Source of the DNA: Laetmonice hystrix
Taxonomy: Eukaryota
Length of the DNA: 64,000 bases
Direction of reading: 5' to 3'
Assembly (NCBI GenBank): GCA_965235115.1
Contig: OZ249452.1
Span: 15,314,001 to 15,378,000 of the forward strand
The stretch's first letter is position 1; every line of letters begins with the position of its first letter. Of this stretch, positions 90 through 27,812 are shown piece after piece. The position numbers and the translations under genes are program-made. The notes beneath the pieces were generated by a model. It made no database searches. It saw nothing but the letters and a program-made list of their open reading frames with translations, and was not told where the DNA came from.

Positions 90-164
90 CTGTTTTTTTG
101 TACTCTTCCTGCGGATGGCCCGGCGGAGGTTCGACGATCGCTCCCGCATGTTGACTCCACTCAT
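90..164 (-). CDS. Candidate alternative first coding exon (MSGVNMRERSSNLRRAIRRKSTKKQ), phase 0
   Basis: ATG with A at -3; 25 codons ending at CAG|GTGAGC; (CAG)n-type leader and two X-box motifs upstream. Confidence 0.65.
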
Positions 165-3054
165 AGTTTGTTGTGGCTGAAATCAATTATACACAACTCC
201 AACTACAACTTTCCTCCGTACCTCGTCCTCTTGTCATCAACATAGCAGCTGCTGCTGCTGCTGCTGCCATCTGCTACTGTAAATCCTTAACTCTCCTTAC
301 AGGTTCTTACACCTAAATCTATTCATAGTATGCAGGCGAGGGTCAGTTCGACTTTCCGAGCCTTTCAGCCGGATCTTGTTTTTTCTTCTCACGTATATAT
401 TATCCTGGTGTACATAATAATTCTCCTCCTGTGAATACACTGATATGTGGAAAGGGTGTGGCGGCTTTTACCAAAGAAACCTGTCTTCTTTCTTTATAAC
501 CTGTAAACAAATCCAGCTGGTTACTATGGAAACATGAGGGCGTCGCTATGGTTACAGTGTCTAGTGCCCGTTTCCTCCGCTGGTACAGGGGACCTCGCCC
601 TGACAGATTTCTGGTTTAGAGAAGAGGGGGTATGACCCCCCCCCTCCTCAGGGGGACCTCTCCGGGGCTGCTGAGGTTGGGTCACTAGGGGGTTAGACCC
701 TCCTGTGACTGATCACTCACTGGAGCCCTCCAGATCTTGCTTCTACCCCCAGTTAGTACCAGGTGACCCGAACACCCTCTGTACGTGAAGTGCAGTGGGC
801 GTGTTTAGGATTTCTTTTTTTTTCCTCGGTTTCAGCACAACCCTGCCAAATAACACCTGCCCGAACAGGTACACACACCTTCACAGTTGATTGCCAGGGT
901 CCTTTGATGACATGATTGGTACACGGGACCAGGCCGTAACAAGGGCTTACCCAGATCACCCTACCATTCTGGTGATACCCTGCAGGTCATAAACCCCCTG
1001 TCCCCCTCACACTTTGTCATTACCCTGCCGGCCTGGTCTTTGAGAGCCGCTGACAATAGAGAGACACGCCAACCCAGACCCACATCAAGTCAACAGTCCC
1101 TGTCAAAACTTCTTTTGCCCGGCCCCTGCTGCTACAGACTCAGGATCCCCGGCCTCTTGACATCCACTAACAGGCCTCGATCCCCACCGCCTCGCTACGC
1201 TGAGTACTTCACAATCCAGCACACCAAATCCACCTCCCAGAGATGAGGCCTACTCCTTGGACTTGGCCGCTACAGCTAGGTCTTCAGTCAGATCCCTCCT
1301 GTTGGGGTGTACTTCTGGTTTGACAGTGCCAGCAAAGATGGCCATGGAATCCTTCTATGACTTGCAGTTACAGTGTTTCTTGACCTTACTCACACCGGAT
1401 CCTAAGGTACATTCAGAGTTATAATGACAGCCTTTGGCTGTAGAGTTGACTACGACATGACGTGTCCTGTACGAGACCTGGCGATCTCTCTCCCTCTCAC
1501 TCACTGCTCACTTACTGTGTCCGTGTAGAGAACATCAAACGACCGCACAGATATTCAGCCCAGGATGTCTCGAACTCTCTGCTTCCCCCGCCCTGGTCAT
1601 CCGTTGGGAGTTCTTGCTGCCCGTTCGACATGCCTTTCACATGACTAGAGAGGTAAAACTTTCCGTGGTCTTGGTGTGATTGTAGATCCCTGCTCGGTTA
1701 GTGTGTACCGACCGTTCAGGCACGTGATTGTCACAGCCGGATATATTCCACATTGTTCTGCTCTAGTTCCCGACAAACACCGACTAACTCGACATACTTA
1801 TCAACAATAGGTGTCGTCCATTTGTCCGTCCGTACTGTCCGTCTTGAGGTTTGTCTGTTATCCTTGTTTGGCGGGGGTTTCTGTGCCTTGTGTATATCTG
1901 AGGCAGAGTTGGGAAGAACTGAACCTCACTTGGAGTTAGTGAAATCTGCCGAGATCGCGGAGCAGCAGGGGTGGTTAGTTACGTCGTTCGTACCCCGATG
2001 GGGGTGCGACCAAACACCCTGTCTGTCCTGACGATTCTCAGACGGTCCGGCCAGTCGGGCCGCGCTGGCCCCGCCCACTGCCGCACTGAGTGACAGCGGC
2101 CCCTCACCATGGCAGCGACCGCCCACGACCTGAGTTCGGCACCGGAATCTGCTGCTGGTCACAGAACTAGTCTGTTCCCAGCGAACACAGAACTCTTCTA
2201 ACTTCAACAAACCCAGCCCCTCCTCTTCCCTCACCAGCAGCCAGCCTCTTCCCATCAGAGCGACACTTAGGCCAATACTCCTGATGTAAGTGTCAGCGGG
2301 CCCAGGGTTAAAGACAGCCGGAGCTAGAGCCGGGTGTTGAAGTGGGGGTAAGGGCAAGGAGAGGGGAAGGGGGTGTGGAGACAGAGGGGTGAGGGGGTTG
2401 GAATCGGCTAGTATTATGTCTACTGGGGTGGAGTGTTGACTGAGGGACTCCAAATGTCTGGGGTTAGAAATCCAAAACTTACTGCGCGATTTTAAGCCAA
2501 GGAGAGTAAAAGTCATTTATAAATATAAGTTACGCCTGTACTGCTCTTTTTATTTGCTCTCTTTCCCCCGCAATTATTCGCAAAAAGTTCCCAGGGGGCC
2601 TTTCAACCATGAGTTTAAAAAAACAAAGACGCTTATGTTTTATTAGTAACCCTGTCCGCCCCCTCCGTGCCCTGTTTCCATGGTGATGGATGTTGTAACC
2701 ATTAGCAACAGGTTATCAACAGATTAGGTACTTGAGCGAACAGCCGTATTTCACGCCGCTAAGTTCTGACTGTCCTTCAGTTCAAACCTAACACCTGTTC
2801 TCGTTGACAGCAGCTGACAACAGATGTCAACAGATGTCAACAGAACCCATCAAGTAGCAATGGGGGAATTTTCCCGACCTCTTCCTTAAAGTACTGGTGT
2901 CCTTGTTATAGAGAGCGAGAGACAGAGAGATTCAGGTTCATGATGTCGTTTTGCCATCTCCTTGACTGCTCCGCCACAAATACAACATGTAGCAAGTTTC
3001 CATAGTCCACATCGCCCCCGGACAATGGCAGCTCCAACAGGTGTGAGGTTACGA

Positions 3055-3160
3055 CAGGTGTTAGAACACCTTGTCTGACCCGACCCTACAGGTGTTAAAA
3101 CACCTTGCCTGACCCGACCCTACAGGTGTTAAAACACCTTGCCTGACCCGACCCTACAGG
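3055..3160. repeat. 34-bp tandem repeat x3 with an internal inverted repeat (AGGTGTT-a-AACACCT)
   Basis: caggtgttaaaacaccttgcctgacccgacccta at 3055, 3089 and 3123. Confidence 0.9.
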
Positions 3161-5483
3161 TCCATACATACTTAACGTTCATAAAACGTTAATAGTTCTT
3201 TGCTATCTGGGAACCATGCATTATCACTACGGCCTGGGTGGCCCCTGACCTCATGCAGTTCTTGTTGATCGTTACCTGTTAACACTGAGTTAGGCTAATC
3301 AAGTTCCAGTCACATCAACAATGCCAGCTGCTGGGGAAGGGAATTCTCGACCTACAGGTGCTACATGATTACCAATATACAATGGCAAACTTATAGAATC
3401 TTACATCTCCTGGGGCGTACCTCCGACCGAACATGGTAAGTTCGACATGCACTTGTAAAGTACAACACACCTGACTATACTAGCAACTTTTTACGACGAT
3501 TTTTTCTGTGAAAACGACATGCTCTTATTCTCAATATAATAATCATAATCTTACAAGTAACACGTAAAAGCTTGTTTTGACGTCACACAGCCTGACTGTG
3601 GTCAGCCAACAGGTTGCCTTCCCTGAGGTACAGGTACAATGCAAGCGTTCGCCGTCAAACACTACAGCCATTCTCCACATTTCACGACCTTTGTTTGCGA
3701 TACCAGAAACACGAATGATTCTTCCCGCCAGCTCTTTGATTTCTTTCCTTCTTTATTTTTTTTTCAGAACAAAAGACGGCTGTTTCCCCCTATAGCACCC
3801 ACCCTCCTCACCCGAGATTCATGCAAGCTAATGTTTTTCTTTATAAGGCAGGTATTTTAAATATTAAAACTTGAACTATGAGAAGATGATTTTAGAGAGA
3901 TATGCTGTATAAGGTATGAGATAGCCACTCCCAGTATCTGATTATGTGTCTGTCATACATACGTAAGGCGGGATACGCAAAACACTGTTCTTCGCCAGTC
4001 CTGTGCGGCTGCTCTATGTTTAAGTTTGCCTTAAAATATATCACTTCTTTCTACTTGTGTGTCTAGCCCCAGGTTATCGACCCGACTAGAAAGTCGGTAA
4101 TTTACCAGACCGCTCCCGATATAACAGGCGGCGCCAGTTTCGTCTTTACGACTCGGGACACAAGAAACCCTATCGGTAAAAGTTAAAGCTTTTGAACGCT
4201 TTCATTTAACTTGTATGTTTGTTATCTGACCTGGCTGGCTGTCTGTCGGTGGGTGCTCTGGTCCTATATGTAATATCTATCTCCTACCAGGGTGGGAGTG
4301 AGGTTCACCCCACTTACTGTGTGGGGGTGAAGTTTACCCCACTTACCGTCTAGATAATTCCTTGGGAAATCTGAGCACCCCCGCCCCATGTAATGGGATG
4401 TGAACTTCACGTGGCAGCATGAAACACCCTCCTTGAGTTGTCATAGAAATACGCCTTCAATCCCGTTTCCATGGCAACGATAGCATTCAGTTACCATGTG
4501 AGGCGCCTTGCTGTGTGTCTATGTCCTTGGTGTGTGTGTGTGTGGGGGGGGGGTGTTTAGTTTAGAAGTGTTGCCCCTACTGCTGTCACAAACTCACCCC
4601 AAGACTTGGCCTGTTCAACGTTTAGTACGTCCAGTTGGTGGAACACGAGACAGCTACGTACACGCCTGGGTCTACCCGATATAGTGTCCACCCCCCGTAA
4701 AAATCAACCAAAACTGTCCAAACAATTATTTCCCCCCTAATATACTCAAAACAAATCCCTATTAATCACCCGCCATTCAATATGTCACTCTATCAGAGAT
4801 AGTATTAAGTACGTTCAAGAGTTGTCTTTCTCTGACATGAGTTTTAATATATTACTACATGTAGACAACGTAAGCTAGTCGTCAACTGCTAAACACAGCA
4901 TATTCTGGTCACACATTTCTACACAGTAGTCCTTACTCAATATAATACGTCTACGAAACCCATGTGGCTCTAGAGTCTAGACTTAAATCTGAAAACCTTT
5001 CTTGCATTTTATACGAAGTCTGATTCGTGGCTCTGTTAGGTCTATACGTAAGGCCAGGTGACTCGTTGGTTCTTCCACTTACCTGAGAAATCCGACCCAA
5101 CAGCCCGTTTCGTTTTTACCTTCTGACATTTTCCCGTCACCAGTGTACGACCACGGTACGTACACGTAGGTCTTCATTAAAACAACAGAATTCTGTATCC
5201 AATCTTAGAGTCAGTTCGGCCTCTACCATGCCAAACTTTGACCGGTAGGTTCATGAAAAGGTGCGAGGTTGTGGCTAACTAACCGTCGCACCTGTAGCTC
5301 CCTCGACCAAGCGTTGCGGTGGTGAAGGACTGTGCCCGACTCCTAGGTGACAACTCGTGGTGCTGAGGCAGGACAGCTGTTGCTGCTGCTCTTCGCATAC
5401 ACAGCATCATGTCGTTTGACACCAGTCCTGCTGTAGGCGCCCAACCGTGTTTCACCTGGGTCTATTGGGACCTTTTCCTAGCT

Positions 5484-6153: not shown

Positions 6154-7173
6154 GAGTAGTCATTTTGTCCACTGCATAGTGTGTCCAATTCACACTCTCT
6201 CTGACACCTACCCTACTTATGCATATTACTATATATAACATTCTCCCGACTGTATCATATATCCATACCTTTAAGTTCCGATTATCCAGTACCCTCCCTT
6301 ACAACATGCGAGTGGGGGAAAGGAAAGGAAAGGAAGCGTTCAATTATCATGATGTTCGATACCGTTGCCGACATTAGCGCCCTCCTGTGACAGACTTAGA
6401 AAGGTTCTAGTTCTCTTAATGACCGCTAGAGGCCATGCGACGGTTGAACATGACGTGTTGCGTGCATGCTATTACACTAATTGAACAACACCCATGCTGT
6501 GCGACTCTTTCCTTACATAACATCGGTGTGGCTATGTCATATAACACTGCATTCGAAGTAAAACACCCAAGGCCCTGATCTTATACGCTAACAGGATGAT
6601 ATGACGTCATGCCAGATGATGGGGGGGGGGAGGGGGGAGATGAGCATTGTCTACCCCTTACACCTCTTTGTATATTACATTTGTTCGAGTTATACGTGTT
6701 ACGCATTTTCAAAATGCTAGAAAATCTTGAATCCTATCATGACATAGACATACTCCCACTGCAAATTTAACCAGGGCATTCCAAGATTCTCACACACGAA
6801 AAAGTGTTGCCCTTAAAAATATCAATTTGGCATGAAAGTGAATCCAACACATCTGGATTATTCACAAAGTTATTGAAGCAGGACAATTAAGTTTCGAAAC
6901 GATATGACATCGTCTACATATAAAACTCCAAAACACACATGTACATATCTGAAATATCAAACAAGAAAAAATGGAAAATTCCCATATGCTCTGCAAAAGA
7001 TAATGAAAATTTGAAATGTTTTCGACAAAATATATGGAAAAACATCCGAAAGAAAAATGGTACCAAGCCCGACATACTATCTAGAAAAAACGGAAATAGA
7101 ACCAAAACAACCTGAAAATGATGCACTTCGATTGGTCAATGGTGATCACATGATATAAAGTCACGTGACTTAC

Positions 7174-7287
7174 CTCCTCAGCCAGATCCTCCGGCTCAGC
7201 CAATGGCGGCTCTTCTTTACTTCTCTCTTGTAGGCGGCTCTGAAAGATGCGACAAATCATTAGCACAAGGCGAACGGTTTCTTTCAT
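7174..7287 (-). CDS. Candidate alternative first coding exon (MKETVRLVLMICRIFQSRLQERSKEEPPLAEPEDLAEE), phase 0
   Basis: 38 codons ending at the consensus donor GAG|GTAAGT; in-frame stop upstream; the Kozak context is weak. Confidence 0.62.
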
Positions 7288-10200
7288 AGATTCAACATAA
7301 CCGTTTTGTAATTTCCATACGGATATTACTATCCTAGAATACAATTGCTAACCGTCTACATGAAATTAACAATTCTTATCAGGGGTCAGTTACAAACGAT
7401 AAGGTTTCATTATTATCACCATATCAAAGAATAAAAAAAATAATCATTTCTTCCATTATAACAGTACGCGGACCAGTATATGTTAATCCTTTCGCGCTGT
7501 CTGTCTGTCTGTCTGTCTGTCTGTCCATCCGTATCCATTACGTTATGTCCCTACAGCCCAACTACTAGTACAGACAACAGAATCCATTATATTCCTATTC
7601 TGAGTTAGGACTCCCCAAACTGTATCTTCACCCTATGCCTATACAACCCCTCTCCTAGTATGACCCTACCTCGTCATTTACCCCTATAAGTTACTTCCAC
7701 GAGACACCTTGTCCTGGTAATGTCAAACCTTGACACTAGATGTCTCCACCCGTTCTCCACCGCTCACACCCACCAACACTGTTACACAAGACAAGGGTGA
7801 AGACGTTTCGGCAAACACAGATTCGGTTTCCTTGGTAACCATCTCATTCCAAACGTTTCCGGCATGTCAGCCCAATCCTGACCTCTGAGTGCATGTTTGA
7901 AAACATTCTTACTGCAGGCTGTATTCTTACTGCATGTCAAATAATCCGTTTTGGTTGGTTGCTGAACAAGTGTCACGTGACCCTTAAAGTTCTCGTAGAA
8001 CGTTTCTATCCAGAACTACAGACGGTCATTCAAACGCACCAACGCGGAAACAATTGGCGGGCAGTTGGAAGTTCTTTTTTAAAAATCGGACAATCATTGC
8101 TTTCTGTGAAAGTACTTTCGACGCCACTATATAGTTTTTTTTTGTCATGGAAGTAAATAAAGAAAGCATCATGATTCCATTAACTGTAAGGTAACAACAC
8201 TCCAACAACAATCTTCCGCCCTGATATTTTTTACCGGAGACCTATATCATATTACAGCCACACCACAACCTCCATGGCAACCACTCATTTTCTATGGCAC
8301 TTAGGTATAGTAAAGACGGTTATTGTATACGACAAACAAAGGCGTCCATTTATATGTCATAACATGTGGCATGAGATGGTCACTCGGTTACCATGGTTAC
8401 ACCATCGTCCAATCAGGAAAGTCCTCTCATGGGCCACAGACAGTGGTGCCACCACGAGGAGCTTCCTACACGGGATCCATGGAAAACGATCTCATCTAAT
8501 GACGATCTCATCTGATATCAAGAAAGTCTCGTTATTTATGTGTTACACTCTGAAATTTTCCTAAACATTTTATCAATATGCTATTACGTGTAACCCCTAA
8601 AATAATTCTGACTCTTACAGACCACAAATTTCCAAGTATTAGACATTTTAAGCCTTTAAGTTTCGGGTCTTTTGGTTGATTTGTTGTTCACAATATCGTT
8701 TCTATTCGCGGCATAAGTGTGAACGAGAGTGAACGATACTACGTATTCCCACCTACTTAGTATATTGATACATCCCCCCACAGAGGGTCGGTATCACCGG
8801 TTCCATATCCACCCCACTTCCGCCCAGTGACCCCATTCCTTGACCTCATTCACCTCATTCCTGGGACACACCCTTCCGGAGAGTGCCTGGTGCCCACTGC
8901 CACCAAGCTGAACCCTCAACTCTCACTTCAGCAAACAACCCCCCTCCACAGGGGGGCACGACCCCCTCCTGCCACCCCAGTGGTATACGTGCTACTATAC
9001 CACCCTTCGAGATCGTTAAGCCTTCTTACACACCCCGTCTCACATAAATCTATCTATAATATCAATAAATCGTTTTAGTCTAACCAAAACAGAGAACCCC
9101 CAAAAAATCATAAAGAACCCCACAGTGTCCGAGTTTAAGTCGTACATTGTTTAGCCCACACAGGTCAAAACGTCATCAAAACGTTTCATTTATACATCCT
9201 ACCCCTCCCAAAGCTTCATCAAATGTTCATTGCTATAGCTGGATATATATGCACGTGTCGGACCACGGCATGTTGTTGGGAGTCGAGACGCCCGGGACTA
9301 CACACTGCTTGACCCCAGGGCGTGGGGTCAAACGTAAATCCATACACACACCTGGCTCGCTGCAGCACCCTGGACACAAATCCACGCCCCGGCGCTCGCC
9401 ATGTGCCCGAAATAACAGCCTGAGTGGCCAAAAATATCTTCGAGCCGCGTCAAAAACGGCAAGCCGGTGCCATTTCTTACTGTAATCCTTGCCCACCAAA
9501 TCCCGGAATCTATCACCGACTTACCCGACATGACGTGCGCACCCTGCGTCCCCTGGCGTTTGTTTACGAGTTGGGCCCTGTCGAGTTCGCCATTTTACAA
9601 AGTCTGGCTAATGGCCCGAGATACTGATCTCCATTTAATTGACAGCGTATGTACTCGGATGCGATAGGCCACATAAAATACAAGTTACAAAAACGTCGAG
9701 TTCACGGCATCCCTCTAAATCATCAGGGTTGGTTTCCGAGTCTGACACTAGGGGGCGCTTCACTTCTAAGGCCTACATCACACAGAAGATTCTGATTCAC
9801 CGAATCGGATTTTGACGTCGCTACCTTTTCTTGACGATCCCATGGAACATTTAAATATTAGAGTCTTGCCCGAATCCCTCGTACAAAAGAAATAATCGGT
9901 GCCGACTAGATTCTGGAAATGTGTCTACGTTTTATGGCAGTCACTGCACAGGAATAGACCTATATCTGTCCATTATTAATATATTCATATTGACTGTATT
10001 CCACATAATCACAGTTTGCTTTCTTAGCGTCCAGCTAACCGACTAGAACAGGAATACATTCTGATAATTCCGTTGTTTACCCATATGTCTTGTTCTGTCA
10101 GTAAATGACAGATTGTGGGACGAATTAGCTAATCTGGGCTTCTCTGAGCCAAATACCCAAATCATGCGACCTCGTCACCTGACCTTTCATGCCTGGTCCC

Positions 10201-11521
10201 TACTCTTTCCACTCCAGTGGCTGGAAATGAAGCAAATACATATTTCTTCTTGGAACATGTGCTGTTCATTCCCCCTCCATTTGCTCTACCATGCAAGTCT
10301 AAATTTATTTTTGTCATAGTCTGAAACCGGGGTGAAAAAGTGCCAGTTTAGAGCTTGACCTCAGCAGCCTCGATGCCAGTTCTCAATCCTCACTGGCTCA
10401 TTACTATTGGTCAGCTGACCTACACGGGAGCCAATCATAACGCACCATACGGATTGCTCCATAGTATCTCTCACTCGGCTCACCGTCGACTAGAATGGGA
10501 GACTCATACCTTGCGACACTCCAGAAAATTATATTCTGTACCAAATGGCGGCTTGCACTAACCCTTTATCTGAACTGTATACATTTGTATTGTCATATTT
10601 AATGTAAATCTTACAGCAAAATATTTATTTCAACTTCAAATAACTTCATTTTGGAGTAACCAAAGGATATCTTTAGCAATGCATTCGTTTCTAAAATGAA
10701 TTAATTTTTACACAAATAATATTGGATAATTTATCGCTAACATCTACTTATATGCAATTTTAATTAGGTGTTAAATAATTATTGAGAAATTAACAACACC
10801 AATACGTGTACTACGTATCTAATAGCGCACTGCATGACTTCTCGACTTGGAAAATGGTAAATTTATCTACAGACATCTCAGCGATAGAGATAAAGAGACA
10901 TTTTCCCATCACCAACAGTATAAAAGTAGGCCTATTAGTCGGTTACCATGCCAACGAATTTTATAGGTGTAAGACACTCGGTGCAGACAATCACACTCAA
11001 GTAAAGAAAATCATTCTGTGACCAACAACCTCCACTAAAATCTACCTCACAGGATACCCACAGGGACAGTTATCAAAACGACGGACAGACACCAAACACA
11101 AGTTGTACTTGAACTGTGATCTACTTAGGTTGAAAGGGGCAGCAGTGGCTTTACGGTCTCAGATATATGGAAGAGCATTTAAGACTTGTCTTCGAAAATT
11201 GGTTTGAGAATTTTAAAATTTTGTGGCGGCAAAAAGTGTACAATAACGACAACTTCGTACAAAAAATCTGCCCCCTGCGTTCTAGGAATTTGGCCAACGA
11301 TAAGCCGGCAACAACAACAACAAAACTAGACCACAGACAAAACATCACCAAAACATACTACAAACTGTGAGGGACAGGGCGTATCGAAACAGTGCTGGTA
11401 TCTAGAAGTTTTAGTGTATGGGGAACCCGCTAGGGTCACACATTACCCTGTGGTTTTCGGGAGTGGCTGTGGGAGAGGTTGGCCATGACAACACAAGCGA
11501 CCCTGTAGAAGCCAATCTCAC

Positions 11522-11659
11522 CATGCAATCCGACATCTCAACCTCTCTGGCTGGGGACGGTAGAGGCGACGATTTCTCGTCCACAGCCTCTTCGTTCGTT
11601 TTGCTACTAAGGCAAGAGAAGAACTTGAAGATCTTGCTTTTTTTCTTAGTTTTACCCAT
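11522..11659 (-). CDS. Candidate alternative first coding exon (MGKTKKKSKIFKFFSCLSSKTNEEAVDEKSSPLPSPAREVEMSDCM), phase 0
   Basis: Perfect Kozak CCACCATGG; 46 codons ending at ATG|GTGAGA; phase matches the donor at 22681; CACGTG x2 and TGACGTCA about 340 bp upstream (11998-12021). Confidence 0.7.
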
Positions 11660-14600
11660 GGTGGTATTGTCCGAGGTTTACCACCACCTTATGGTAATCC
11701 TGTTAATGCATCCACATGACAAGACGCTGAGACGTCGCCAGGCCCACATGGCCGAATCGAGGTGAACAAAGCACCACAGAAATTAGCAGCAGTTTCAAAC
11801 AGGTTTATGTGAAGTGCTATCATAACCTGGCGCCAACACTTGCGATTATTTTTTCAACCTGAAGAACACAGACTGACTGATGGCAGGAAAACCGAATATT
11901 GGCGTTTTGAGCAAATAAAATGTCGTTTTCTTCACTTCTGCATCACTGGAAGGTGTTTTAACGAGACTTTGAAAACATACACACAGCCACCGGATATCAC
12001 GTGATCGTCACGTGACGTCATGGAAGACAGACATGGCAATGACCACCTCCAGCCAAGATGACCTTGAGAGCTATTCTACCCGGAACTTAAGTTTCCTCCT
12101 CTACCGGTAGGTGGCGGTGCGGGCTGTTAACAATGGAAGGAATGGTGTTTGTCTGAGGAGGAAGTTTCACCTGCCGCTTTCTATTATAGCTAGGTAACAA
12201 CGCAATCCGAAAAGGGTCCGCTTTACAGGTACAAACACCAAACAGGTGATCGTGAATTCTTGGACGATCCTGAATATGGATGAGGACAATGTTTCGCAAG
12301 TACACTACATTCCTGGTGTGGCAATAAACACATCCTTGTATTCACACACGTGACCTAAGTACTACGCATCAAAGCAGTGTTTCACAGGGAATCCCACTGG
12401 AAGGTAGAAGCGTCTTGATATCTATTCCTAGCAGCAGTGGCAATAATATCCTGATCTGGTATAATCATGTCGAAATAATCCCATGTGATGTCGACGAAGA
12501 TTTTGTTTCTATTGGGTGAGGGGGGTTGAGGTCGGAGGCCTGGCGGCCTGAGGTCAGTGCTGTGCTGTACTATGCGCAGTGTTGTCGTCGCAGTGCCGTC
12601 ACTACCAGTGCCTGGCTAAGCAAGGCCCTATGTCACCAAGGCGGGTGCGGGTGCCAGCAGCCCTCCAAGAACCCATGTATACGACACCGAGACCTCGCCA
12701 GCATAAGCACGACGGCCAAGGTCAAAGGTCAAAGACCCGACCTTCCGGTCAGACTGAATGCCGAAATCAGCCCTGGTACTTCCGCTTACATCAGTTCAAG
12801 GCCCCTTGACCAGTGGTCAATTCGGTCTAATTACCGCCTGCTAATCCGTGTTAATACAATGACCATATAACAAGTCGGTTCCAACTGACTGATGTCACAT
12901 TGTAATCCAGCTGTGGTTAAGACCATTGAAGGGCATTCGATACGTTGCCCTCAGACGTTACTTGTACTATTACCACCTGTTGGCTTATTGACCTTCACCA
13001 AACCGTTACACAACTCAAGCACCCACAGGTGTTCCAATGTGTCCTCACTGAACTATCCACCTTCAGTGTTTAACCTTGATAATCCAATCATACTGGATGA
13101 CGTTCCACTTATCCTGGTTCAGCTGTCTGTGGATGAAGATGAACCTGTTCTTCAGGCACTGTTATCACTCAGGGCCTCACTCGTTGCAGTCAATTCAATA
13201 GTTTATCTGCACGCCTGGCATAAACTCTCCAGTGTGCAACAGTTTGAATCGTCTGACGACTAGCGACTGAGGGTCCAGGAGGCCTGATCCTCGGTAAGTC
13301 GTGGATTAGGGAGAGATTATCCTATCTCTGGTGTAAATCTCACACCAATGGTCCCGGGAAGTGTTCGATCTCAGCTCCAGAACCGTAAACACACACAGGA
13401 ACACTCTATGTGATTTCAAACAGACCGTGGTGACCAGGCGATCTCAATCCGATTCATGACAAAAGGACGTAGTTCTCTCAGACATCCTCACGACTGGCTC
13501 ACAACTGCGAACGCCACGTTTGAGACGGACCGATGACGGGACTGTGACGTCACGCGCGTGGCGCCGTCTGGTTAGCGGACCGTGGATAACGGCTCAGTGT
13601 AATTGTCCCTGGTCGTCCTGCCCTATATCTCTCCACTCTGTGAGCCACATGCAACCTTTGCTTTCAACAACTCTCTCTCTCCTTCAACTATACCACTCTC
13701 AACCTGCACACACGTAGATCTGCCTACACCTGCATGCACTCCTTACCAATTCCACTCACGGCGACCTACAATCTACAACTCATTCTTTTGAGACCTTTTC
13801 TTCACTTAAATCTTTAAATTTTTCACGGCTGGTGGCCACTGAAAGCAAACCATTTTTTACTATTTTATAATGGGTCCAGAAGCGTCCTATATCCATATAG
13901 ACAGCAACAGACTTTACGAGCCATTTCGTTTAAATTTCAACTAACAAATCTGCATTGTGTTCTAGTCGAGAATATTAATTGACATTAATTTTGACACAAC
14001 CAGACTCGTATCCCAGTCAGGGAACATCAGAATGGGGTCTCACTAATGATCATACTCCAATCGTCACTCAAGGCATAATTAGGTCAATCTGCTGGTCCTA
14101 GCTGCAACTTGGATCATGACCCAATTTCCATGAAAACATCCGCAGCCGTTTTAAACCTTGTTCATGCAGGCTGTCTGTTTCCAAGAAGTCTTTTCACAAA
14201 GCTCCCACACAATGGGCATGTCTGTATATCTACACCGTGTGAAACATGGGCGGTTTACGCAGAGGTTTTTCTCGTTAGGAACCCTGGAGTTGTATACATA
14301 ACTCTTGTCTGGCCTTACAATCCTTCAGCCTGCCACGCGCCACCGTTTCTAACATCAACTTGTGTTTGTTTATGCTAGATAACTGTACGTTCCCTGCACA
14401 CAACAGGCGTTCCTCCTTGCTTCAAATACGGATTTCATTTTTTAATTTATCTGACCTCGCTCTTCATCTCAACCACTCCGGCGTCCCCTGTCAGCCAGCC
14501 CCAGGTGTCAAATCTTCGTGACCTTGAGGTCTGCAGCGACCTCTAATGATGATCTATGTCAAACATGGCCTCCCATGGCAATTAACTCTAATCTCGACCA

Positions 14601-16356
14601 GGAATAGCACGCGGATGTCCAAAATTAGACAGCAAGGCGACATCGGAATCGCCAGGTTGTTATGGCAACAGCAACAATCCTTCCCCCGTCCTAATTTTAC
14701 TTTCTGTTTGCGGTTTAACCAAGCAGCATTACCAAGAGGTGAACAAAAGCTTCTTTGACTCTGAAATTAGCAACAGGAGTTCATCTGGGCTGTCTCAGTG
14801 AAACGTTGCCTCCTCAATGTAACTGGTTATTGTAAATGGCGCCGCTGCAGGCAAGGCATGCATTGGATCCTAACACATGTAGTCAGGCCATTTATCCACA
14901 GCAATCTGCCGTCACTGGCGATTTATTGAACGCTCCGTCATATTACGTCTCTCCGCCGCCACTAAGCTGTCTCGACGGCTCTCATTGGACGGGCACAATT
15001 CCGAAAACATACACCTACTCTGCTCATTGGCCGAAAGCCACCAAACGGCCAAAATACACACTAATAAGTACGTCGAGTTGCGTCAAAACTCTACTCTTGT
15101 TTGATAATGAAACGGTCCCGGCTCAACTACCGTACCGGAATGGTCCCTCTGTTGGACGGACCCGAACCGCCAGAGACAGCGGGCATCGTGAACATTACCT
15201 TCTGACCCTTTCTTCACAGACTGATCACAACTCTACTGAAAGCTACACTTTGGCGTCAATGCACGACTTCTAGACTCGCGTTCTATTTCAGGACCTCGGT
15301 GCCCTGCAATTAGCATTGCTAATCTTTCCCAAGTGCCATAGCAACGTTTTCCCCTCTTCATTTACTCTTTAACGCCCCAGTTTTCAATAATCAATTTCAT
15401 TAAAACTACTTTTCCAGGCATGCTGGCTTCTATGTATCACTCGAAAAAATCGGTTTCCATGGAAATCAAACTACGTCCATTGACAGGTGAGAAAGTGGCA
15501 CAGCGGATGCTAGGCCGACCACGTTGGGACGATAAAATCCCCGTCGGTTCTCGACATGGGACAACAATTGTCTCTCACACTGATCCAACAGTGGTCGTCA
15601 GGCACCCGGCCGGGCGGTTGCCATGGTAACCAGTCTACTTTTGTAGTAACCACAATACCCTCAACAGGAGGGCCGCCTACGGCATACATCAAAATTGACT
15701 CGTAATAGCTATAATATCCGGCTGTCTTTCGCCTAATGAAAATGTAACAAACTGATATATGTTTCTGTCTTAATGAGAGGTTTACAATGGCATCCTAAAG
15801 GTAAGTGAGTAAGGCATTACTTCAGTAGGCCAATCGACCACCCGTCTCTGTTACCTCATTGACTACTCTCCCTAGCAACCATGGCGAGACCTACAATCAC
15901 ACCTACGTAACCGCCCAAGGTTATAACTCTTAGTAACCAATGACTACGGAAACCACTGAACGATCTACTTAGATCACAGATATCACCGAGGTATCTCTAC
16001 ATCATATGTACAACCAGTGCAATTCAATGAGAAACTATTCTACAACGGTCTAAGAAGGCAGGAGGCTCAGAGAAATGCACATAGTCCCTTGAATATGTTT
16101 CTGGGGGTTATTATGGCTCACAGATTATTGTACCAACTCAAACACGTTGTGCGTTCAGGTCAGCTGGCAGGTTTGGTCGGATAGTCATGACGTCACTTAT
16201 CCTGGGTCAGATTAGCAGATGATCCAAGGGAATAATAACCCGTTGGTCGTAGGAAAAAGATCACACATTGCATGGAGGGGATGACTTGGAGGGTACAGTG
16301 CAGTATTCTTGATGGAAAAAACACACTGCAGTCCTGCCCACATCCACTTGAGCACT

Positions 16357-16666
16357 TCTGACGTCCGCTGTAGAACTGCCGACGCCCACTGTAGAACTGC
16401 CGACGCCCACTGTAGAACTGCCGACGTCCACTGTAAACCTGCCGACGTCCACTGTAGACCTGCCGACGCCCACTGTAAACCTGCCGACGTCCACTGTAGA
16501 CCTGCCGACACCCACTGTAAACCTGCCGACGTCCACTGTAGATCTGCCGACGTCCACTGTAGACCTGCCGACGCCCACTGTAAACCTGCCGACGTCCACT
16601 GTAGAACTGCCGACGCCCACTGTAGAACTGCCGACGTCCACTGTAGAACTGCCGACGTCCACTGCA
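16357..16666. repeat. 21-bp minisatellite, about 14 copies
   Basis: cactgtagaactgccgacgtc unit; it generates the periodic ORFs in the track. Confidence 0.96.
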
Positions 16667-18820
16667 AGCCCTGACGACGTCCAAGCCAGAAGCACAACCG
16701 TCCACGAGTGCCAACCTTGGGGCCGTCGAGGGTTAAATCATCGGGATCCCTTGACTTTAGGTAAAGCAGCACTGTCTGCACAACGTTTCCACCAAGGAGT
16801 GTGTATCTGTGTGTGGTTCAGTATTCGCCAGGATACACACAGCCACACACAGCCTGGCCGATTTCTGCCCAGTTGCCGACCGATTTCACAAACCACCTGT
16901 TCACGGTCTGGGGCAAGGTCAGAGCCAAATCAAATAAACACTTTCCTCCTAACTCCACATATCATCCACATCCACCTTTTGTTACACCCTCAAACATGTG
17001 GAGTATGGGTGGGCCCCCGGTCGGATGGGGGGGGGGGGTTCAATCGGTTTCCATAGCAACCACCTTGGCTGAAAAATAGACTTGGGCGTTGAGCCAGATT
17101 GCAGAGTTGTGGGTGCAGGAACAGCTGCTCCTGGTCGTTTTCTTCCCCACCGTGAAGTCAGACCATAAGTCACAGCCAGCGGCTAAACATAGGTGGATCC
17201 TGTTGTGTGCCGGTGGGCAACCCGAAAAAACATCGCTTCTTTTAAAAGAAAGAAAGAACACACATGAGGTGGTTCAAACATGTAGGATGTAATCCTGGAT
17301 TTTGGGTGATGACAGTTCCACAGTTCCCTGGCGATAGTCACAGACCATTTCTTGCCACTGTCTCGTTTTGACGAGCTATGATATGAAGATTCCTGGACAC
17401 AAGACAGTTAAAGGTCGTGGATGATTCTGCTAAACGTACTCCCGAGTCCACCTCAATGGTGACCGCTCGACCCGGGGGGCGACCCACCTTGTGTCCTAAC
17501 TGACCACTCCCGACAGGTGAGTGGGTATGTAAACACAGGTATGTCCCGTTATAGTACACCTGATGATGATGAGGTGACCCCACCTCCATCACCTTCCCCC
17601 ATCATGGCCTCAAACACTGATGTCCCAGGCGATAATCCCGCCAGTATCTAGGTCAGATGTCCTCTGTAGTGTCCCCCACTGGTTGTCCCGTTTAGTAGAG
17701 CCAGGCCGATGTAAACACCATCACTGGTAATCAAGGATCACCGCCGATACATGTCATCAGTATTTAGTGGTTTAAATTATCTTAAACACCGGCTGCTTGT
17801 TCACCATGGAGGACACCCAGGTGCTTGTCTGCTGTCCCGGCTGTAGTAAGGTACACAAATAGTGATGATGTCACAGCTGCCCATACACACACACTAAGCG
17901 GCGGGCGGTGGGGGGGGGGGGGGTGAGAATAATGGATTAGAAAGATCCTAGATGTAGGATGCTATCCCAGCTCAGACTCATTGCGAACACTTCCTGGATA
18001 ATTCTCTCAGCGCCTCGCTGCCAACATCTTGGCACACACTGACTGGAGGAAAATGTCTCCCTGTCCTGGAGTCGTCTTCCTCCTGGCTGATGGCGGCTGC
18101 TGCTGCTGCTGTGGTTCTGTACGTCACGTCACACGTATTGGAGGGCGGGAGGCTGCACAATCTCTCCTCTCTATCTCTCTTCTCTCATAACACCAATCTA
18201 CCCTCCAGGTACGGGAAATCCGGACGATAATCTGAACCTTTAATCCACGGTGGGGGGCAGGAGGCGGAGCTGGGGTAGTCGGCCTCAGCAGGTGTCCGCC
18301 GGTGGTGGAGTAGGGGGGCGCAGCCGGAGGGGCCTCCCTGGGGTGCTGACGATCAGAAATGGGGGGCGCCTTGACCCCCTTACTGCAGAAAAAATCCAGC
18401 CGTGCAGGGCTGGCGCAATATGAGCGAGTGTGTGGTGGTGGTGGACGGCGTAGGGAGGCCTCACGTCCGCTGCCGGGGCTCTACTGGCGGTGGTGGCGGT
18501 GATGGCGCTAGTGGTGCTGGCGGCGGTGGTGCTCAGTCTGTGCGGTTAGTGCTAGTCTCTCGTCCCGCCGCTGCTGCTGCAGCTGCTGCTGCTGGATGAT
18601 GCTGGACGGAGGCGGGCGATGCTGGGACGTACGGACGGATGGTTGGGTGGTTAGCTCAGCACGCGCTGCCTCTCTCTGCCTCCCCATCCATGCTTACATC
18701 CACACACACATGGCTCGATCTCTCTCCCCGGCTTGTCACTACAGATGGCCGGCGGTAGACTGTAGTATAGACCGGCCTCGATCGGTCGGTCGGTCGGTGG
18801 CTGGGGTTAGATCGGACCTA

Positions 18821-18980
18821 CACTGCAAACGGTCACACTGCAGACGGTCACACTGCAGACGGTCACACTACACACGGTCACACTGCAGATGGTCACACTA
18901 TATACGGTGACACTACACACGGTGACACTACACACGGTCACACTACACACGGTCACACTACACACGGTCACACTACACAC
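18821..18980. repeat. 15-bp minisatellite, about 10 copies
   Basis: ggtcacactgcagac / ggtcacactacacac units. Confidence 0.93.
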
Positions 18981-19824
18981 AATCTTGACAGTTAGAGTCG
19001 TCTTTATGCCCCCCCCCCACACACACACACCCCGTACATGCGGGTGATCATTGTATACTGTGTCCACCCCCCCCCTCCACCCCGGACTCCTTGACGGTAG
19101 TATTGCCACACCCGCCCGCCTACAGCATCCTTGACAACCCGGCCTACAGACCCGCCAGTCCCGACTCTCGCCCTGTGTCCAACACCCGTCCAGCGGTGGT
19201 GGTTCACACAAACGCTGGTGGTGCTAGCCGTGGTGCTGGTGGTGGTGGTAGATTCTACATATTATAATCTGACCAGGACTGACAAGTGACAGAGAGGAGA
19301 GGGCCTGTTTGGGGAAGGGGGAAGGACCCCCCTTGCCAACTTGATCCACGCTCACCCTACCAAAAAAGGTCACATGTAGGCCTATTGGGTCGGTCGGCCG
19401 GGGCCGGGTCTGAGTGCCATAGCTCCTATACCACAGTGGTCATTTCAATGTTTGTGGTGGCGTATGACCTCACACCAGCCTCCTACCTCCCAGGGTCACC
19501 GAAAGGTGGAGCCACCTGGTCCTGGCTCGAATCCAGTTGCTGACATATAACCGTGGGGTTTCTGACCTCACTGCTGACCTCGTAACGTTCACCACTCCCA
19601 GGTTACAAACATTAGTTCTTGTCTGTCCACGACAGTGTTGACCCCTCTTGAATCAGTTTACTTTTCTTGACGGACCCCCGATCTCCTTGTCCTGAATCTG
19701 TCCTCTCCTCTCATTAACTCAGAATAATGATGAGCCACATCGGAGTGGGTCCACAACCATCTCTCTCAGATGACGCGTTCTGGAACCATACACACATAGA
19801 CCGACCTGCACCTTTGTTGTCTCG

Positions 19825-20270
19825 GCCTGCAAACCAAACTGACCTACAAACCTGACCTGCAAACCAAACTGTACCACCTGACCTACTGTTTTGAGAACAC
19901 CTACCTACGAACCAAACTATACTGAAAACGCCTGACCTACGAACCAAATTTTAGTGAGAACACCTGACCTACGAACCAAACTGTACTGAGAACACCTGAT
20001 CTACTAACCAAACTGTACTGAGAACACCTGACCTGCAAACCAAACTGTGCTGAGAAAACCTGACCTGCAAACCAAACTGTACTGAGAAAACCTGACCTGC
20101 AAACCAAACTGTACTGAAAACATCTGCAATCTACCAAACTGCAATGGGCAGACCTCACCTACCAACCAAGCTTTACTGAACACTGATCTGGACACACCTG
20201 ACCTGCAAACAAAACTATATTGTGCCCACCAAACCGTACTGGTACCTCATGACCTGCAAACAAAACTATC
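19825..20270. repeat. Degenerate minisatellite of about 31 bp
   Basis: cctgacctgcaaaccaaactgtactgagaaca-like units. Confidence 0.88.
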
Positions 20271-21095
20271 GGTCACACCCAAGCATAATTCACTAGATAT
20301 ATCTCACCGAGAAGCCAAACTGAACTGGCCACAACTGACCTACAAATTAAACTTTGAAAAGTGCGGCTTTCAACCAAACTCGGAACACAAACTGTCATCC
20401 CATTTTAACAGAATTGTCATGCAATGATAAAATGCAGAGAAAGTAACCTGACCTCACTGAATCCAACTCCCTTGAATTCTACCCCCCCCCCCCTTCCTAG
20501 CGACCCCCACCCCTCCCCGTGGAACTGGAGGCCCCTTCAGAACCCCACCAACCACAAGTTGTGGTGACCCGATTCCGCGAGTCCTGCAGACGAGCTCCGA
20601 TCAATACAGGCCCGCTGCAGCACAGTCCGCCCCGGGACCTACTATGTCGGTCGGGGGGTGCCAGGATCCAGCCGGGCGGACGGGTCCATTCTCTGGCGGC
20701 GACGGAGGCAGAACACAAGGTAGGGACAACGACAAGCAAGTCCGCCATCATGTCACATGTAACATGTTCATGCTCTGGCTTTCATATTATATATGAGACC
20801 ACAGACATATCGAAAATATATTATTGCATCCCCATCCAGCTGCGCTCCAAATGTGGGATATGCGATGAAAATGGGCAAGAAAATTGACGGCATCTTTTTC
20901 AAGTACTGGAGTAAAGCAAGGACTGACTATTTGCCATCTCTTCCACGACTGACATCAGAGTCATAATAGTAGACCTCGGCAATAGCGAGTTGAACTTCCT
21001 GCTGAGTAGCCTGTAAATGGGATCCTGGCATCCCCCGACTGGCATACTGTAGGTCCTTACACTTGAGGTGATTCGGTCTTTTAACTGGTACATGA

Positions 21096-22290
21096 ACGTC
21101 ACTGCCTTTCTGTCTCGAACTCGTTGTCTTCTCGATCCATTGACAAACAGAACTAAAGAACTACCACCCATCTACTGGATGTCACTGCCTTGTCAGAATT
21201 CTGTCTCTAACTCGTTGTCTTATCTAAACAAAACTAAAGAACTACAACCCATCTACCTGACGTCACTGCCTTGTCAGAATTCTGTCTCCAACTCGTCTTA
21301 TCTAAACAAACAGAACTAAAGAACTACCACCCATCTACCTGACGTCACTGCCTTGTCAGAATTCTGTCTCTAACTCGTTGTCTTCTCGATGTATTATTGA
21401 CAAACAGAACTGAAGAACTACCACCCATCTACTGGACGTCACTGCCTTGTCAGAATTCTGTCTCTAACTCGTTATCTTATCTAAACAAACAGAACTAAAG
21501 AACTACCACCCATCTACTGGACGTCACTGCCTTGTCAGAATTCTGTCTCTAACTCGTTGTCTTCTCGATCCATTGACAAACAGAACTGAAGAACTACCAC
21601 CCATCTACTGGACGTCACTGCCTTGTCAGAATTCTCTCTCTAACTCGTTGTCTTCTCGATGTATTGACAAACAGAACTGAAGAACTACCACCCATCTACT
21701 GGACGTCACTGCCTTGTCAGAATTCTGTCTCTAACTCGTTGTCTTCTCGATGTATTGACAAACAGAACTGAAGAACTACCACCCATCTACTGGACGTCAC
21801 TGCCTCGTCAGAATTCTGTCTCTCGTTGTCTTCTCGATCCATTGACAAACAGAACTGAAAAACTACCACCCATCTACCTGACGTCACTGCCTTGTCAGAA
21901 TTCTGTCTCGAACTCGTTGTCTTCTCGATGTATTGACAAACAGAACTAAAGAACTACCACCCATCTACTGGACGTCACTGCCTTGTCAGAATTCTGTCTC
22001 TAACTCGTTGTCTTATCTAAACAAACAGAACTGAAGAACTACCACCCATCTACCTGACGTCACTGCCTTGTCAGAATTCTGTCTCTAACTCGTTGTCTTC
22101 TCGATGTATTGACAAACAGAACTAAAGAACTACCACCCATCTACTGGACGTCACTGCCTTGTCAGAATTCTGTCTCTAACTCGTTATCTTATCTAAACAA
22201 ACAGAACTGAAGAACTACCACCCATCTACTGGACGTCACTGCCTTGTCAGAATTCTGTCTCTAACTCGTTGTTTCCTCCATTGACAAACG
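21096..22290. repeat. Minisatellite of about 85-94 bp with two interspersed unit variants, about 13 copies
   Basis: acaaacagaact(a/g)aagaactaccacccatcta(ctg/cct)gacgtcactgccttgtcagaattctgtctctaactcgtt.. ending either ttatctaa or ctcgatgtattg. Confidence 0.96.
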
Positions 22291-22680
22291 AAGAATTACC
22301 GTCGGTCTGAGAGTATCAACCTAAAGGTTCCTAGTTCCTGGAGAAATATATTTTTGTAGCCCGTAGAAATTCCACTGTTTTCTCAACATCTCTGGAGCAT
22401 TTATCTTTTCTTTAGCTGAACATCCTAAATTTTCTAACGTCTGGTTGCAAGAATCGCTTTTCTGAATAAAATCAATAATGTAACGCTATAACTCAATGTA
22501 TACCGCATGTAGGGCCTACACAGAAAGGGTTAAACCCACTAAACCTCTTCTTTCTAACAACCCCGCTCTTCCGCCCACACCCACTTCCTTCCTGTCATCT
22601 CCCTTCTCTTCATCACATAAAAACCAATTTCAGCAATCCACAGAAGACAAATCACAATTTGTTGAGAAAAACGAACTTAC

Positions 22681-22804
22681 CTTGAAGAACTTTCCAGAGT
22701 TCCGTTGGTCCTTGAGTTTGGACCCGTCCGACAAAGATTTCTCTATTGCCTGTTTGTCCAGCCGGCTTTGGCTCAGTTTCCGTACTGGATTCATGAGCCA
22801 TTTT
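22681..22804 (-). CDS. trio: Trio exon: linker (KWLMNPVRKLSQSRLDKQAIEKSLSDGSKLKDQRNSGKFFK), phase 2/0
   Basis: tttctttag acceptor and GTAAGT donor; RKWL..PVR.LS motif is conserved in Trio/Kalirin between SH3 and GEF2. Confidence 0.93.
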
Positions 22805-23105
22805 CTAAAGAAATCATGAGAAGAAAAACAGTCTTTAATTCAAACCATTACTCCTGAAGCAACTACTCTGCCATCTGGCGGAAACTGAGAGTACTACTCC
22901 CCTTACCTTTTATTTGCACAACACACAACAGGACACATTCAAAACAAAAATATCATCTCATAGCATCAAGTCTTTGTTACAAGTAAATCATTTACAATCT
23001 TTACAGGTGCAGAATACCAGGGTGTTAAAACAACGAAACAAACATATCGCGATAATTTCACGTCCAGAATGATTGACATTTGACGTGCGTGACGTCATCA
23101 CTCAC

Positions 23106-27801: not shown

Positions 27802-27812
27802 CATTTGTATTT

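What the first reader, a model, noticed from the sequence alone, without database searches (positions are those of the whole stretch)
90..22680. Array of alternative first exons between SH3 and GEF2 that would give GEF2-only Trio isoforms different N-termini
Seen in sequence: the >22 kb interval after the exon ending in phase 0 at 22681 has no recognisable constitutive Trio exon. It does contain three ATG mini-ORFs that each end exactly at a phase-0 donor (11659-11522, 7287-7174, 164-90), plus weaker candidates. Established knowledge: C. elegans unc-73 and Drosophila trio use internal promoters to make RhoGEF2-only isoforms. Inference: this gene has a variable-first-exon/constant-exon layout in which promoter choice sets the N-terminal targeting peptide of a RhoA GEF. 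I cannot tell whether this particular array has been described.
Basis: partly seen in the sequence, partly recalled or inferred. Interest (0 to 1): 0.8.

Follow-up and report, generated by a model that had tools for sequence, protein, structure and literature searches.

The report
One real alternative Trio first exon
Of three proposed alternative first exons in the long SH3-to-GEF2 interval of an invertebrate Trio gene, one is an internal exon of the main transcript, one has no support, and one is a conserved coding first exon that probably gives a GEF2-only isoform, a gene layout already known from Kalirin Duet and worm UNC-73.

Summary
The three ATG mini-ORFs are in the sequence as described. 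Such mini-ORFs are common by chance: 13 are observed and about 7 are expected in this interval.

- **Candidate 2 (7287-7174)** is not a first exon. A spliced 2845-nt RNA contig joins the post-SH3 exon (donor 22681) to an acceptor at 7239, and joins donor 7174 to the next linker exon 12.2 kb away. So 7239-7174 is an internal 66-nt phase 0-0 exon, and the ATG at 7287 is intronic. This also contradicts the claim that the interval holds no Trio exon of the main transcript.
- **Candidate 1 (164-90)** is absent from that transcriptome. It shows no detectable conservation.
- **Candidate 3 (11659-11522)** is a real coding exon.
  - Its peptide is conserved from the ATG in at least seven ORFs from other animals, with saturated third codon positions.
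  - It sits between the same two Trio exons in the two lineages where that could be checked.
  - Its GTGAGA donor is nucleotide-invariant and in phase 0.
  - A second conserved phase-0 donor lies at 11447.
  - Low-depth RNA contigs cover its ATG and the upstream flank.
  - Its splice into Trio exons was not observed.

Verdict: there is one conserved Duet/UNC-73-like alternative first exon, not an array.

The parts
22681..22805 (-). Post-SH3 linker exon of Trio, beginning KWLMNPVRKLS. Its donor AAG|gtaagt is in phase 0.
   Evidence: There is a weak Pfam SH3-RhoG_link hit. The 30-nt loose end behind 7241 in the X4 contig maps uniquely to 22683-22712. An ortholog with 77-88% identity lies in L011.
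11522..11659 (-). Conserved ATG-initiated coding first exon, short form of 46 codons. It begins MGKTKKKSKIFKFFSCL and ends at a proximal phase-0 donor, ATG|GTGAGA.
   Evidence: The start context is ACCACCATGG, with an in-frame TAA 21 nt upstream. Three database hits score E=2e-7 to 3e-5, and four more ORFs were found. Third positions are saturated while the amino acids stay fixed, and GTGAGA is invariant in 5 DNA sequences. The exon lies between the post-SH3 exon and the 66-nt exon in L011, and about 12 kb upstream of DH2 in the overlapping locus L015 from the same contig. In L014 it lies upstream of the 66-nt exon ortholog.
11447..11521 (-). Possible extension of the same exon to a second, distal phase-0 donor (AGG|gtaatg). 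It encodes a conserved STGS..W block.
   Evidence: The STGS..W block shows codon-like conservation in ours, L010, L011 and L014. Conservation ends at a GTAA[AT][TG] donor. The block is disrupted in L009.
11623..12400 (.). Region carrying low-depth RNA contigs at 11623-11836, 11881-12073 and 12333-12400+. It is the putative 5'UTR and promoter-proximal region of the alternative first exon. The strand is unknown.
   Evidence: X4 records 10-12 have depths of 5-10, against 91 for the main transcript, and there is no X4 coverage from 7242 to 11622. The region is unique in the genome. There is no Rfam family here.
7174..7239 (-). Internal 66-nt phase 0-0 linker exon (SRLQERSKEEPPLAEPEDLAEE) of the main Trio transcript.
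   Evidence: A 2845-nt X4 contig at depth 90.9 lies only on 7173-7241. Its two loose ends map to exon 22805-22681 and to the linker exon at C29:15309019. Orthologs in L011, L015 and L014 end in ..EDLASE|gcaagt.
7240..7287 (-). This is intron sequence, ending in the acceptor tctttcag.
   Evidence: There is no X4 coverage beyond 7241. tblastn alignments of candidate 2 cover only residues 25-38 in L011/L012/L013/L015 and 23-38 in L014.
90..164 (-).
   Evidence: X4 holds fewer than 5% of the 32 sampled words of window:1-330, while the DNA runs hold 0.69-1.00. No ortholog was found in the 7.9 kb between the 66-nt exon and the next linker exon of L015. There is no Pfam match.

Best explanation
The window carries a Trio/Kalirin/UNC-73-type gene on the minus strand, with the domain order DH1-PH1, SH3, linker, DH2-PH2.

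**Main transcript.** The post-SH3 exon (donor 22681) is spliced across 15.4 kb to a 66-nt phase 0-0 exon (7239-7174). That exon is then spliced across 12.2 kb to the next linker exon, 5 kb left of the window.

**Alternative first exon.** One conserved alternative first coding exon lies inside the 15.4-kb intron.
- It starts at ATG 11659.
- It encodes an invariant basic-hydrophobic-Cys N-terminus, MGKT[KR]K[KR]SK[IF]FK[FL][FL]SCL.
- It ends at a phase-0 donor at 11522, with a possible second donor at 11447.

**Inferred function.** Transcription starting upstream of this exon and splicing to the phase-0 acceptor at 7239 would yield a GEF2-only (RhoA-GEF) isoform. Its unique N-terminal peptide probably tethers it to membranes. 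This parallels the palmitoylated N-terminus of p63RhoGEF and the Duet promoter of Kalirin.

**The other two candidates.** They are not first exons. 7287-7174 is the internal exon plus upstream intron. 164-90 is most likely a chance ORF.

**Shown versus inferred.** Shown here: the two main junctions, the coding conservation, the conserved position of the exon, and RNA over its ATG. Inferred: the exon's own transcription start, its splice partner, and the membrane-anchor role.
For: - **Gene identity.** Pfam finds RhoGEF, PH and SH3 on the exons in the order DH1-PH1, SH3, DH2-PH2.
- **X4 is spliced RNA.**
  - It holds 0.28 of the words of a stretch that is about 31% exon-internal words.
  - Its 2845-nt contig touches only 7173-7241 of the 5.9 kb that were laid.
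  - The contig's loose ends map uniquely to 22683-22712 and to C29:15308989-15309018.
- **Candidate 3 conservation.**
  - The peptide has hits at E=2.2e-7, 5.9e-6 and 2.8e-5 among 1.84 billion representatives.
  - 22 columns are invariant, starting at M1 G2 K3 T4.
  - In the DEKSSPLSSP block, 10 of 10 third positions vary, against 3 and 2 first and second positions.
  - GTGAGA is invariant in 5 DNA sequences.
  - Flanking DNA does not align.
- **Conserved position in Trio.** L011 and L015, overlapping loci from one contig, have the order post-SH3 exon, candidate-3 ortholog, 66-nt exon, next linker exon, DH2-PH2, all on one strand. L014 has the candidate-3 ortholog upstream of the 66-nt exon ortholog.
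- **Nothing else is conserved.** Of all minus-strand ORFs of at least 15 aa in the interval, only these three blocks match the relatives.
- **RNA near candidate 3.** X4 contigs cover 11623-11836, 11881-12073 and 12333+. Nothing is covered between 11622 and 7242.
- **Start context.** The ATG sits in ACCACCATGG, with an in-frame stop 21 nt upstream.
[quoted passage not shown] The N-terminal 29 aa of p63RhoGEF confer plasma-membrane localisation through palmitoylated Cys residues (PMC3722567).
Against: - No read or contig shows candidate 3 spliced to any Trio exon.
- X4 contigs do not cover 11522-11622, and there is no loose end at either donor.
- Contigs carry no strand or 5'-end information, so the RNA near 11.6-12.4 kb could be antisense or unrelated.
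- Only one transcriptome, from one sample of unknown tissue, exists for this organism.
- Two conserved donors leave the exon end ambiguous.
- The canonical N-myristoylation motif is not met, because position 6 is K. The anchor role rests on analogy alone.
- The absence of candidate 1 from one contig set does not exclude tissue-specific use.
Confidence: 0.66

Rival explanations
1. One reading: all three mini-ORFs, plus weaker ones, are alternative first exons. Each has its own promoter and each splices to one common phase-0 acceptor left of the window, giving GEF2-only isoforms with different N-termini.
For: All three end in phase 0 at plausible donors. Every linker exon in this region is phase 0-0, so any of them would stay in frame.
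Against: - Candidate 2 is used as an internal exon from an acceptor at 7239, with its ATG in the intron.
- Candidate 1 is absent from the transcriptome and is not conserved.
- About 7 such mini-ORFs are expected by chance.
- Only one ATG ORF in the interval is conserved.
Confidence: 0.03
2. The conserved ORF at 11659 is an independent small gene nested in the Trio intron. It would be a micropeptide of about 82 aa in this genome, or the first exon of another transcript, and it is not spliced to Trio exons.
For: - In this genome the ORF reads through both donors to a stop at 11411-11413, giving 82 aa.
- Conservation continues past the first donor.
- No junction to Trio exons was seen.
Against: - Conservation stops exactly at a GTAA[AT][TG] site in phase 0. 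Beyond that site the sequences and ORF lengths diverge freely.
- GTGAGA is nucleotide-invariant although neighbouring third positions are saturated.
- No other conserved coding block exists downstream except Trio's own phase-0 exons.
- The position between the two flanking Trio exons is kept in the one contig that carries both. In L014 the order with the 66-nt exon ortholog is also kept.
Confidence: 0.17
3. The region at 11.4-12.4 kb is a conserved non-coding regulatory element or an intronic transcript. The apparent peptide conservation is incidental.
For: A CRE/E-box cluster lies at 11997-12020. The RNA contigs have low depth and unknown strand.
Against: - The substitution pattern is codon-like, with third positions saturated and amino acids fixed. 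Indels keep the reading frame.
- DNA outside the ORF does not align.
- The CRE and E-box motifs are not conserved upstream in the relatives, and they are enriched throughout the window.
Confidence: 0.04

Closest known systems
[quoted passage not shown]
   Same: An internal promoter and first exon lie in the intron just upstream of the second GEF domain of a Trio/Kalirin-family gene. The product lacks the spectrin repeats and GEF1.
   Different: In this gene the transcription start and the splice junction are inferred, not shown. I could not compare the N-terminal peptide with Duet's, because no sequence was available in the tools. The organism is an unidentified invertebrate.
C. elegans UNC-73 isoforms that contain only RhoGEF-2, such as D1 and E (Steven et al. 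2005, as cited in PMC3280986 and PMC3541206)
   Same: This is an invertebrate Trio ortholog that expresses isoforms containing only the Rho-specific GEF2 domain, with separate tissue functions.
   Different: UNC-73 has several such isoforms. Here only one conserved alternative first exon is supported. The primary paper was not held, so exon-level comparison was not possible.
p63RhoGEF (ARHGEF25) versus its splice variant GEFT (PMC3722567)
   Same: The DH-PH module is homologous to Trio/Kalirin GEF2. Whether the protein sits at the plasma membrane depends on a short N-terminal peptide that contains Cys, and an isoform lacking that peptide is cytosolic. Candidate 3 also begins with a basic-hydrophobic stretch and an invariant Cys.
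   Different: p63RhoGEF has five Cys residues within 29 aa, while this peptide has one invariant Cys (C16) and an invariant Gly2. No sequence homology was tested. Lipidation is untested.

Membership tests
Trio/Kalirin/UNC-73 dual-GEF gene | Two DH-PH modules in one gene with an SH3 domain between them, all on one strand | tested here: met
   RhoGEF and PH hits lie at window 54.3-50.5 kb. The SH3 hit lies at 36.3-36.0 kb. A second RhoGEF and PH lie at C29:15307.9-15303.4 kb. All are on the minus strand. One 2845-nt RNA contig links the post-SH3 exon, the 66-nt exon and the next linker exon.
Trio/Kalirin/UNC-73 dual-GEF gene | SH3-RhoGEF linker region (Pfam PF16609) | tested here: inconclusive
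   Exon 22805-22681 gives 17 bits at E=0.0048, below the 26.6-bit cutoff. A genome-wide search with the family found nothing. The other linker exons have no hit.
Internal-promoter GEF2-only isoform (Duet / UNC-73 RhoGEF-2-only type) | ATG-initiated exon located in the intron upstream of GEF2 and downstream of GEF1 and SH3 | tested here: met
   Candidate 3 lies between exon 22805-22681 and exon 7239-7174. The same order is seen in L011/L015. In L014 the ortholog lies upstream of the 66-nt exon ortholog.
Internal-promoter GEF2-only isoform (Duet / UNC-73 RhoGEF-2-only type) | Protein-coding constraint on the unique exon | tested here: met
   E-values down to 2e-7, 22 invariant residues, saturated third positions, and frame-preserving indels.
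Internal-promoter GEF2-only isoform (Duet / UNC-73 RhoGEF-2-only type) | Own transcription start upstream of the exon | tested here: inconclusive
   RNA contigs cover 11623-12400+ at 5-10% of the main depth. Contigs show no 5' ends or strand.
Internal-promoter GEF2-only isoform (Duet / UNC-73 RhoGEF-2-only type) | Splice junction from the unique exon into the common GEF2-encoding exons, in frame | tested here: inconclusive
   Phase 0 to phase 0 is compatible with acceptor 7239 and with every later linker exon. No junction-bearing contig was found, and 11522-11622 is uncovered.
N-myristoylated proteins (MGxxxS/T motif) | Gly2 with Ser or Thr at position 6 | tested here: not met
   Gly2 is invariant, but position 6 is Lys in all sequences. 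Myristoylation is therefore not claimed.
Palmitoylated N-terminal membrane anchors (p63RhoGEF-like) | N-proximal Cys in a basic or hydrophobic context, with demonstrated acylation and membrane localisation | not testable with these tools
   Cys16 is invariant and is flanked by KxFKFFS and L. Acylation and localisation need experiments.

The most novel reading that the evidence does not exclude
A previously undescribed N-terminal membrane-targeting peptide, MGKT(R/K)K(R/K)SKFFKLFSCL, is conserved among several invertebrate species. It defines an ancestral Duet-like, GEF2-only Trio isoform. Two conserved alternative 5' splice sites include or omit a second conserved block (STGS..VTW), so a single promoter would yield two differently tailed membrane-anchored RhoA GEFs.
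Probability: 0.4. Interest if true: 0.5.

Novelty: new member of a known kind. Interest (0 to 1): 0.38.

Why it matters
GEF2-only isoforms of Trio/Kalirin/UNC-73 couple Galpha-q signalling to RhoA. In worms and mice they have functions separate from the full-length protein. A conserved first exon with an invariant basic-hydrophobic-Cys N-terminus would show how such an isoform is placed at membranes in invertebrates. It would also give a concrete, testable peptide.

The result corrects the gene model as well. ATG-to-GT mini-ORFs in long introns are mostly chance matches.

Tried and rejected
- **Pfam linker family.** A search of the whole genome with PF16609 found nothing. Pfam scans of the candidate ORFs and linker exons also found nothing useful.
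- **Word-index protein search.** The 82-aa candidate-3 ORF found no relative, although the exhaustive HMMER search later did. That blank was therefore a sensitivity limit, not absence.
- **DNA-level alignment.** Alignment of the candidate-3 region to relatives fails outside the ORF. This rules out a simple close-relative explanation, but it also prevents promoter comparison.
- **Promoter motifs.** The CRE/E-box cluster at 11997-12020 looked promoter-like. The same palindromes are enriched across the whole window and are not conserved upstream in relatives, so I did not use the cluster as evidence.
- **Non-coding RNA.** Rfam finds no known RNA family in 1-23000.
- **Repeats.** The candidate-3 region is single-copy in this genome, so it is not a transposon.
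- **Inaccessible contigs.** Contigs of the closest relative (70% identity in the next linker exon, P0001) and of P0004 could not be read as DNA. Conservation of candidate 1 in the nearest relative is therefore untested.
- **Names.** Cluster look-up gave no names or organisms.
- **Literature.** The primary UNC-73 isoform paper is not held.
- **Candidate 1 as a cassette exon.** I considered it as an internal cassette exon, because an in-frame tttcag acceptor lies at 177. This was rejected for the available sample because the transcriptome holds none of its words.
Full report
**Setting**

The window is G000:C29:15314001-15378000 of a 627-Mb animal genome. A Trio/Kalirin/UNC-73-type gene runs on the minus strand.
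- DH1 and PH1 exons lie at about 54.3-50.5 kb.
- An SH3 exon lies at about 36.3-36.0 kb.
- A post-SH3 exon lies at 22805-22681.
- The second DH-PH module starts 6.1 kb left of the window, at C29:15307.9 kb.

I fetched the left flank (L002-L008). There I found the linker exons that precede DH2:
- A 204-nt exon at C29:15309019-15308816 (window -4981 to -5184), with acceptor tttgcag|GAG and donor CTG|gtacg.
- An 84-nt exon.
- A roughly 160-nt exon ending ..KKRE.

The first two of these exons are phase 0-0; the third starts in phase 0 and ends in phase 2.

**Checking the observation**

The exon ending at 22681 is in phase 0, and a phase-0 acceptor exists left of base 1.

The pattern itself is weak evidence. 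The minus strand of 1-22680 holds 13 ATG-initiated open frames of at least 15 codons that end exactly at GTRAG. Block shuffles give 6.8 +/- 2.7, with a maximum of 15.

**RNA evidence**

No run is on record as RNA for this organism. One run of the same sample, X4 (59 Mb of contigs), holds 0.28 of the sampled words of L002:3800-5050. That is about the share of words lying wholly inside the four exons there.

I laid X4 on window:6500-12400, with DNA run X2 as control. X2 covers every bin. X4 covers only four pieces.

- **Main contig.** One 2845-nt contig at depth 90.9 lies only on 7173-7241.
  - The 30 letters beyond 7173 map uniquely to C29:15308989-15309018, the start of the 204-nt linker exon.
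  - The 30 letters beyond 7241 map uniquely to window 22683-22712, the end of the post-SH3 exon.
  - The one- and two-letter overlaps are the usual splice-site ambiguity.
  - The main transcript therefore splices 22681|7239 (a 15,441-nt intron) and 7174|C29:15309019 (a 12,154-nt intron).
- **Candidate 2.** It is the internal 66-nt phase 0-0 exon 7239-7174 (SRLQERSKEEPPLAEPEDLAEE), preceded by the acceptor tctttcag. The ATG at 7287 is intronic.
- **Candidate 1.** X4 is not among the holders of window:1-330, although the DNA runs hold 0.69-1.00 of its 32 words and a listing slot was free. Neither a first exon nor the possible cassette exon 176-90 is in that transcriptome.
- **Candidate 3.** Three low-depth X4 contigs (depths 5.1, 10.2 and 4.9) lie on 11623-11836, 11881-12073 and 12333-12400+.
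  - They cover the ATG (11659), the first 37 nt of the ORF, and the upstream flank.
  - Nothing is covered from 11622 down to 7242.
  - The rest of the exon and its donor are not covered, so there is no junction evidence either way.
  - Contigs give no strand and no 5' end.

**Conservation**

An exhaustive HMMER search of 1.84 billion representatives with the 46-aa peptide found three proteins, at E=2.2e-7, 5.9e-6 and 2.8e-5. A follow-up search with one of them found four more. All are ORF calls on genomic contigs of other animals.

- **Protein alignment.** It is invariant at M1 G2 K3 T4 K6 S8 K9 F11 K12 S15 C16 L17 K20 T21 and in a DE.SSP..SP block. Conservation begins at the Met.
- **Start context.** In this genome an in-frame TAA lies 21 nt upstream, and the context is ACCACCATGG.
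- **Codon pattern.** DNA was available for four other loci (L009, L010, L011, L014). Flanks do not align, yet the pattern inside the ORF is typical of coding sequence. In the DEKSSPLSSP block all 10 third positions vary, against 3 first and 2 second positions.
- **Proximal donor.** This points to constraint on the nucleotides themselves, as expected of a splice donor.
- **Distal donor.** An STGS..VTW block downstream of the hexamer is also conserved in a codon-like way in four of the five sequences. Conservation then ends at a second phase-0 donor, AGG or ATG|GTAA[AT][TG]. In this genome that gives an exon end at 11447. In L009 this block is disrupted.
- **Reading.** I take this as two alternative 5' splice sites.

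**Position in other species**

In GCA_029980185.1 (overlapping loci L011 and L015 from one contig), the order on one strand is:
1. Post-SH3 exon ortholog (L011:4670-4747).
2. Candidate-3 ortholog (L011:10124).
3. 66-nt exon ortholog (L011:12491-12532), which has a GC donor there.
4. Next linker exon (L015:11305-11493).
5. DH2 and PH2, with Pfam RhoGEF and PH hits on the called genes.

L014 shows the candidate-3 ortholog 5 kb upstream of the 66-nt exon ortholog.

I also compared every minus-strand open frame of at least 15 aa, from window 23500 to beyond PH2 (785 frames), with these loci. Within the interval only three frames are conserved: the post-SH3 exon, the candidate-3 ORF and the 66-nt exon. 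Candidate 1 and the ATG-bearing part of candidate 2 are not conserved.

**Interpretation**

Three things are shown here:
- The splice path of the main transcript.
- A single conserved coding first exon in the intron.
- RNA over that exon's start.

One thing is inferred. A promoter upstream of 11659 would drive a transcript whose first exon joins the next acceptor, 7239 (phase 0), and continues through the linker exons into DH2-PH2. This would give a GEF2-only protein with a unique 46- or 71-residue N-terminus.

The invariant basic-hydrophobic stretch and Cys16 suggest a membrane anchor, by analogy with p63RhoGEF. The first 29 residues of p63RhoGEF, with palmitoylated Cys, place it at the plasma membrane, and its variant GEFT lacks them and is cytosolic (PMC3722567). 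The classical myristoylation motif is not met, because position 6 is Lys.

The layout matches two known cases. [quoted passage not shown] The other is the set of UNC-73 isoforms that carry only RhoGEF-2 (PMC3541206, PMC3280986).

**Rivals**

- An independent nested small gene remains possible (about 0.17), because no junction was seen.
- A purely non-coding element is excluded by the codon pattern.

**Verdict**

This is a new member of a known kind of gene layout. It is of moderate interest, mainly for the conserved N-terminal peptide and the two conserved donors.

Noticed in passing
window 1-64000; cluster at 11997-12020: The palindromes TGACGTCA (15 sites against 1.08 expected) and TCACGTGA (10 against 1.18) are strongly enriched across the window. 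Four of the TGACGTCA sites sit in one repeat family at 21258-22062. The rest have unique flanks. Three sites overlap within 24 bp, about 350 bp upstream of the candidate-3 ATG.
   Followed up: partly
L011:12533-12538 and L014:8429-8434: In two other species the ortholog of the 66-nt linker exon ends GAG|gcaagt, which is a GC-AG intron. This genome has GAG|gtaagt at 7173.
   Followed up: no
window 11447-11521 and L010, L011, L014: A block STGS[LI]..[ST]W lies just after the invariant GTGAGA. It is conserved in a codon-like way in four species but is broken by stops in L009. Whether it is translated through a distal donor or has another role is open.
   Followed up: partly
G000:C29:15247367-15248985 (minus strand), about 56 kb downstream of GEF2: A third set of RhoGEF (DH) exon matches lies on the same strand. 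It may be a separate neighbouring RhoGEF gene.
   Followed up: no
window 22681, 7239-7174; C29:15309019-15308816; L002:4691-4608: The donor at 22681 is in phase 0 and the next three linker exons are phase 0-0. Any of those three could be skipped or joined to any phase-0 first exon without breaking the frame. This also makes in-frame mini-ORFs uninformative.
   Followed up: partly
window 16190-16780, 18800-19210, 27730-28520, 47200-47980: Minisatellite arrays create long spurious open frames on both strands. They account for most of the large ORFs in the introns.
   Followed up: no
I did not examine it.
   Followed up: no
L015:10001-10978: A 325-aa open frame without a Pfam hit lies in the relative's intron, just upstream of its linker exon. 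It is also present on a second contig (L016). Its nature is unknown.
   Followed up: no
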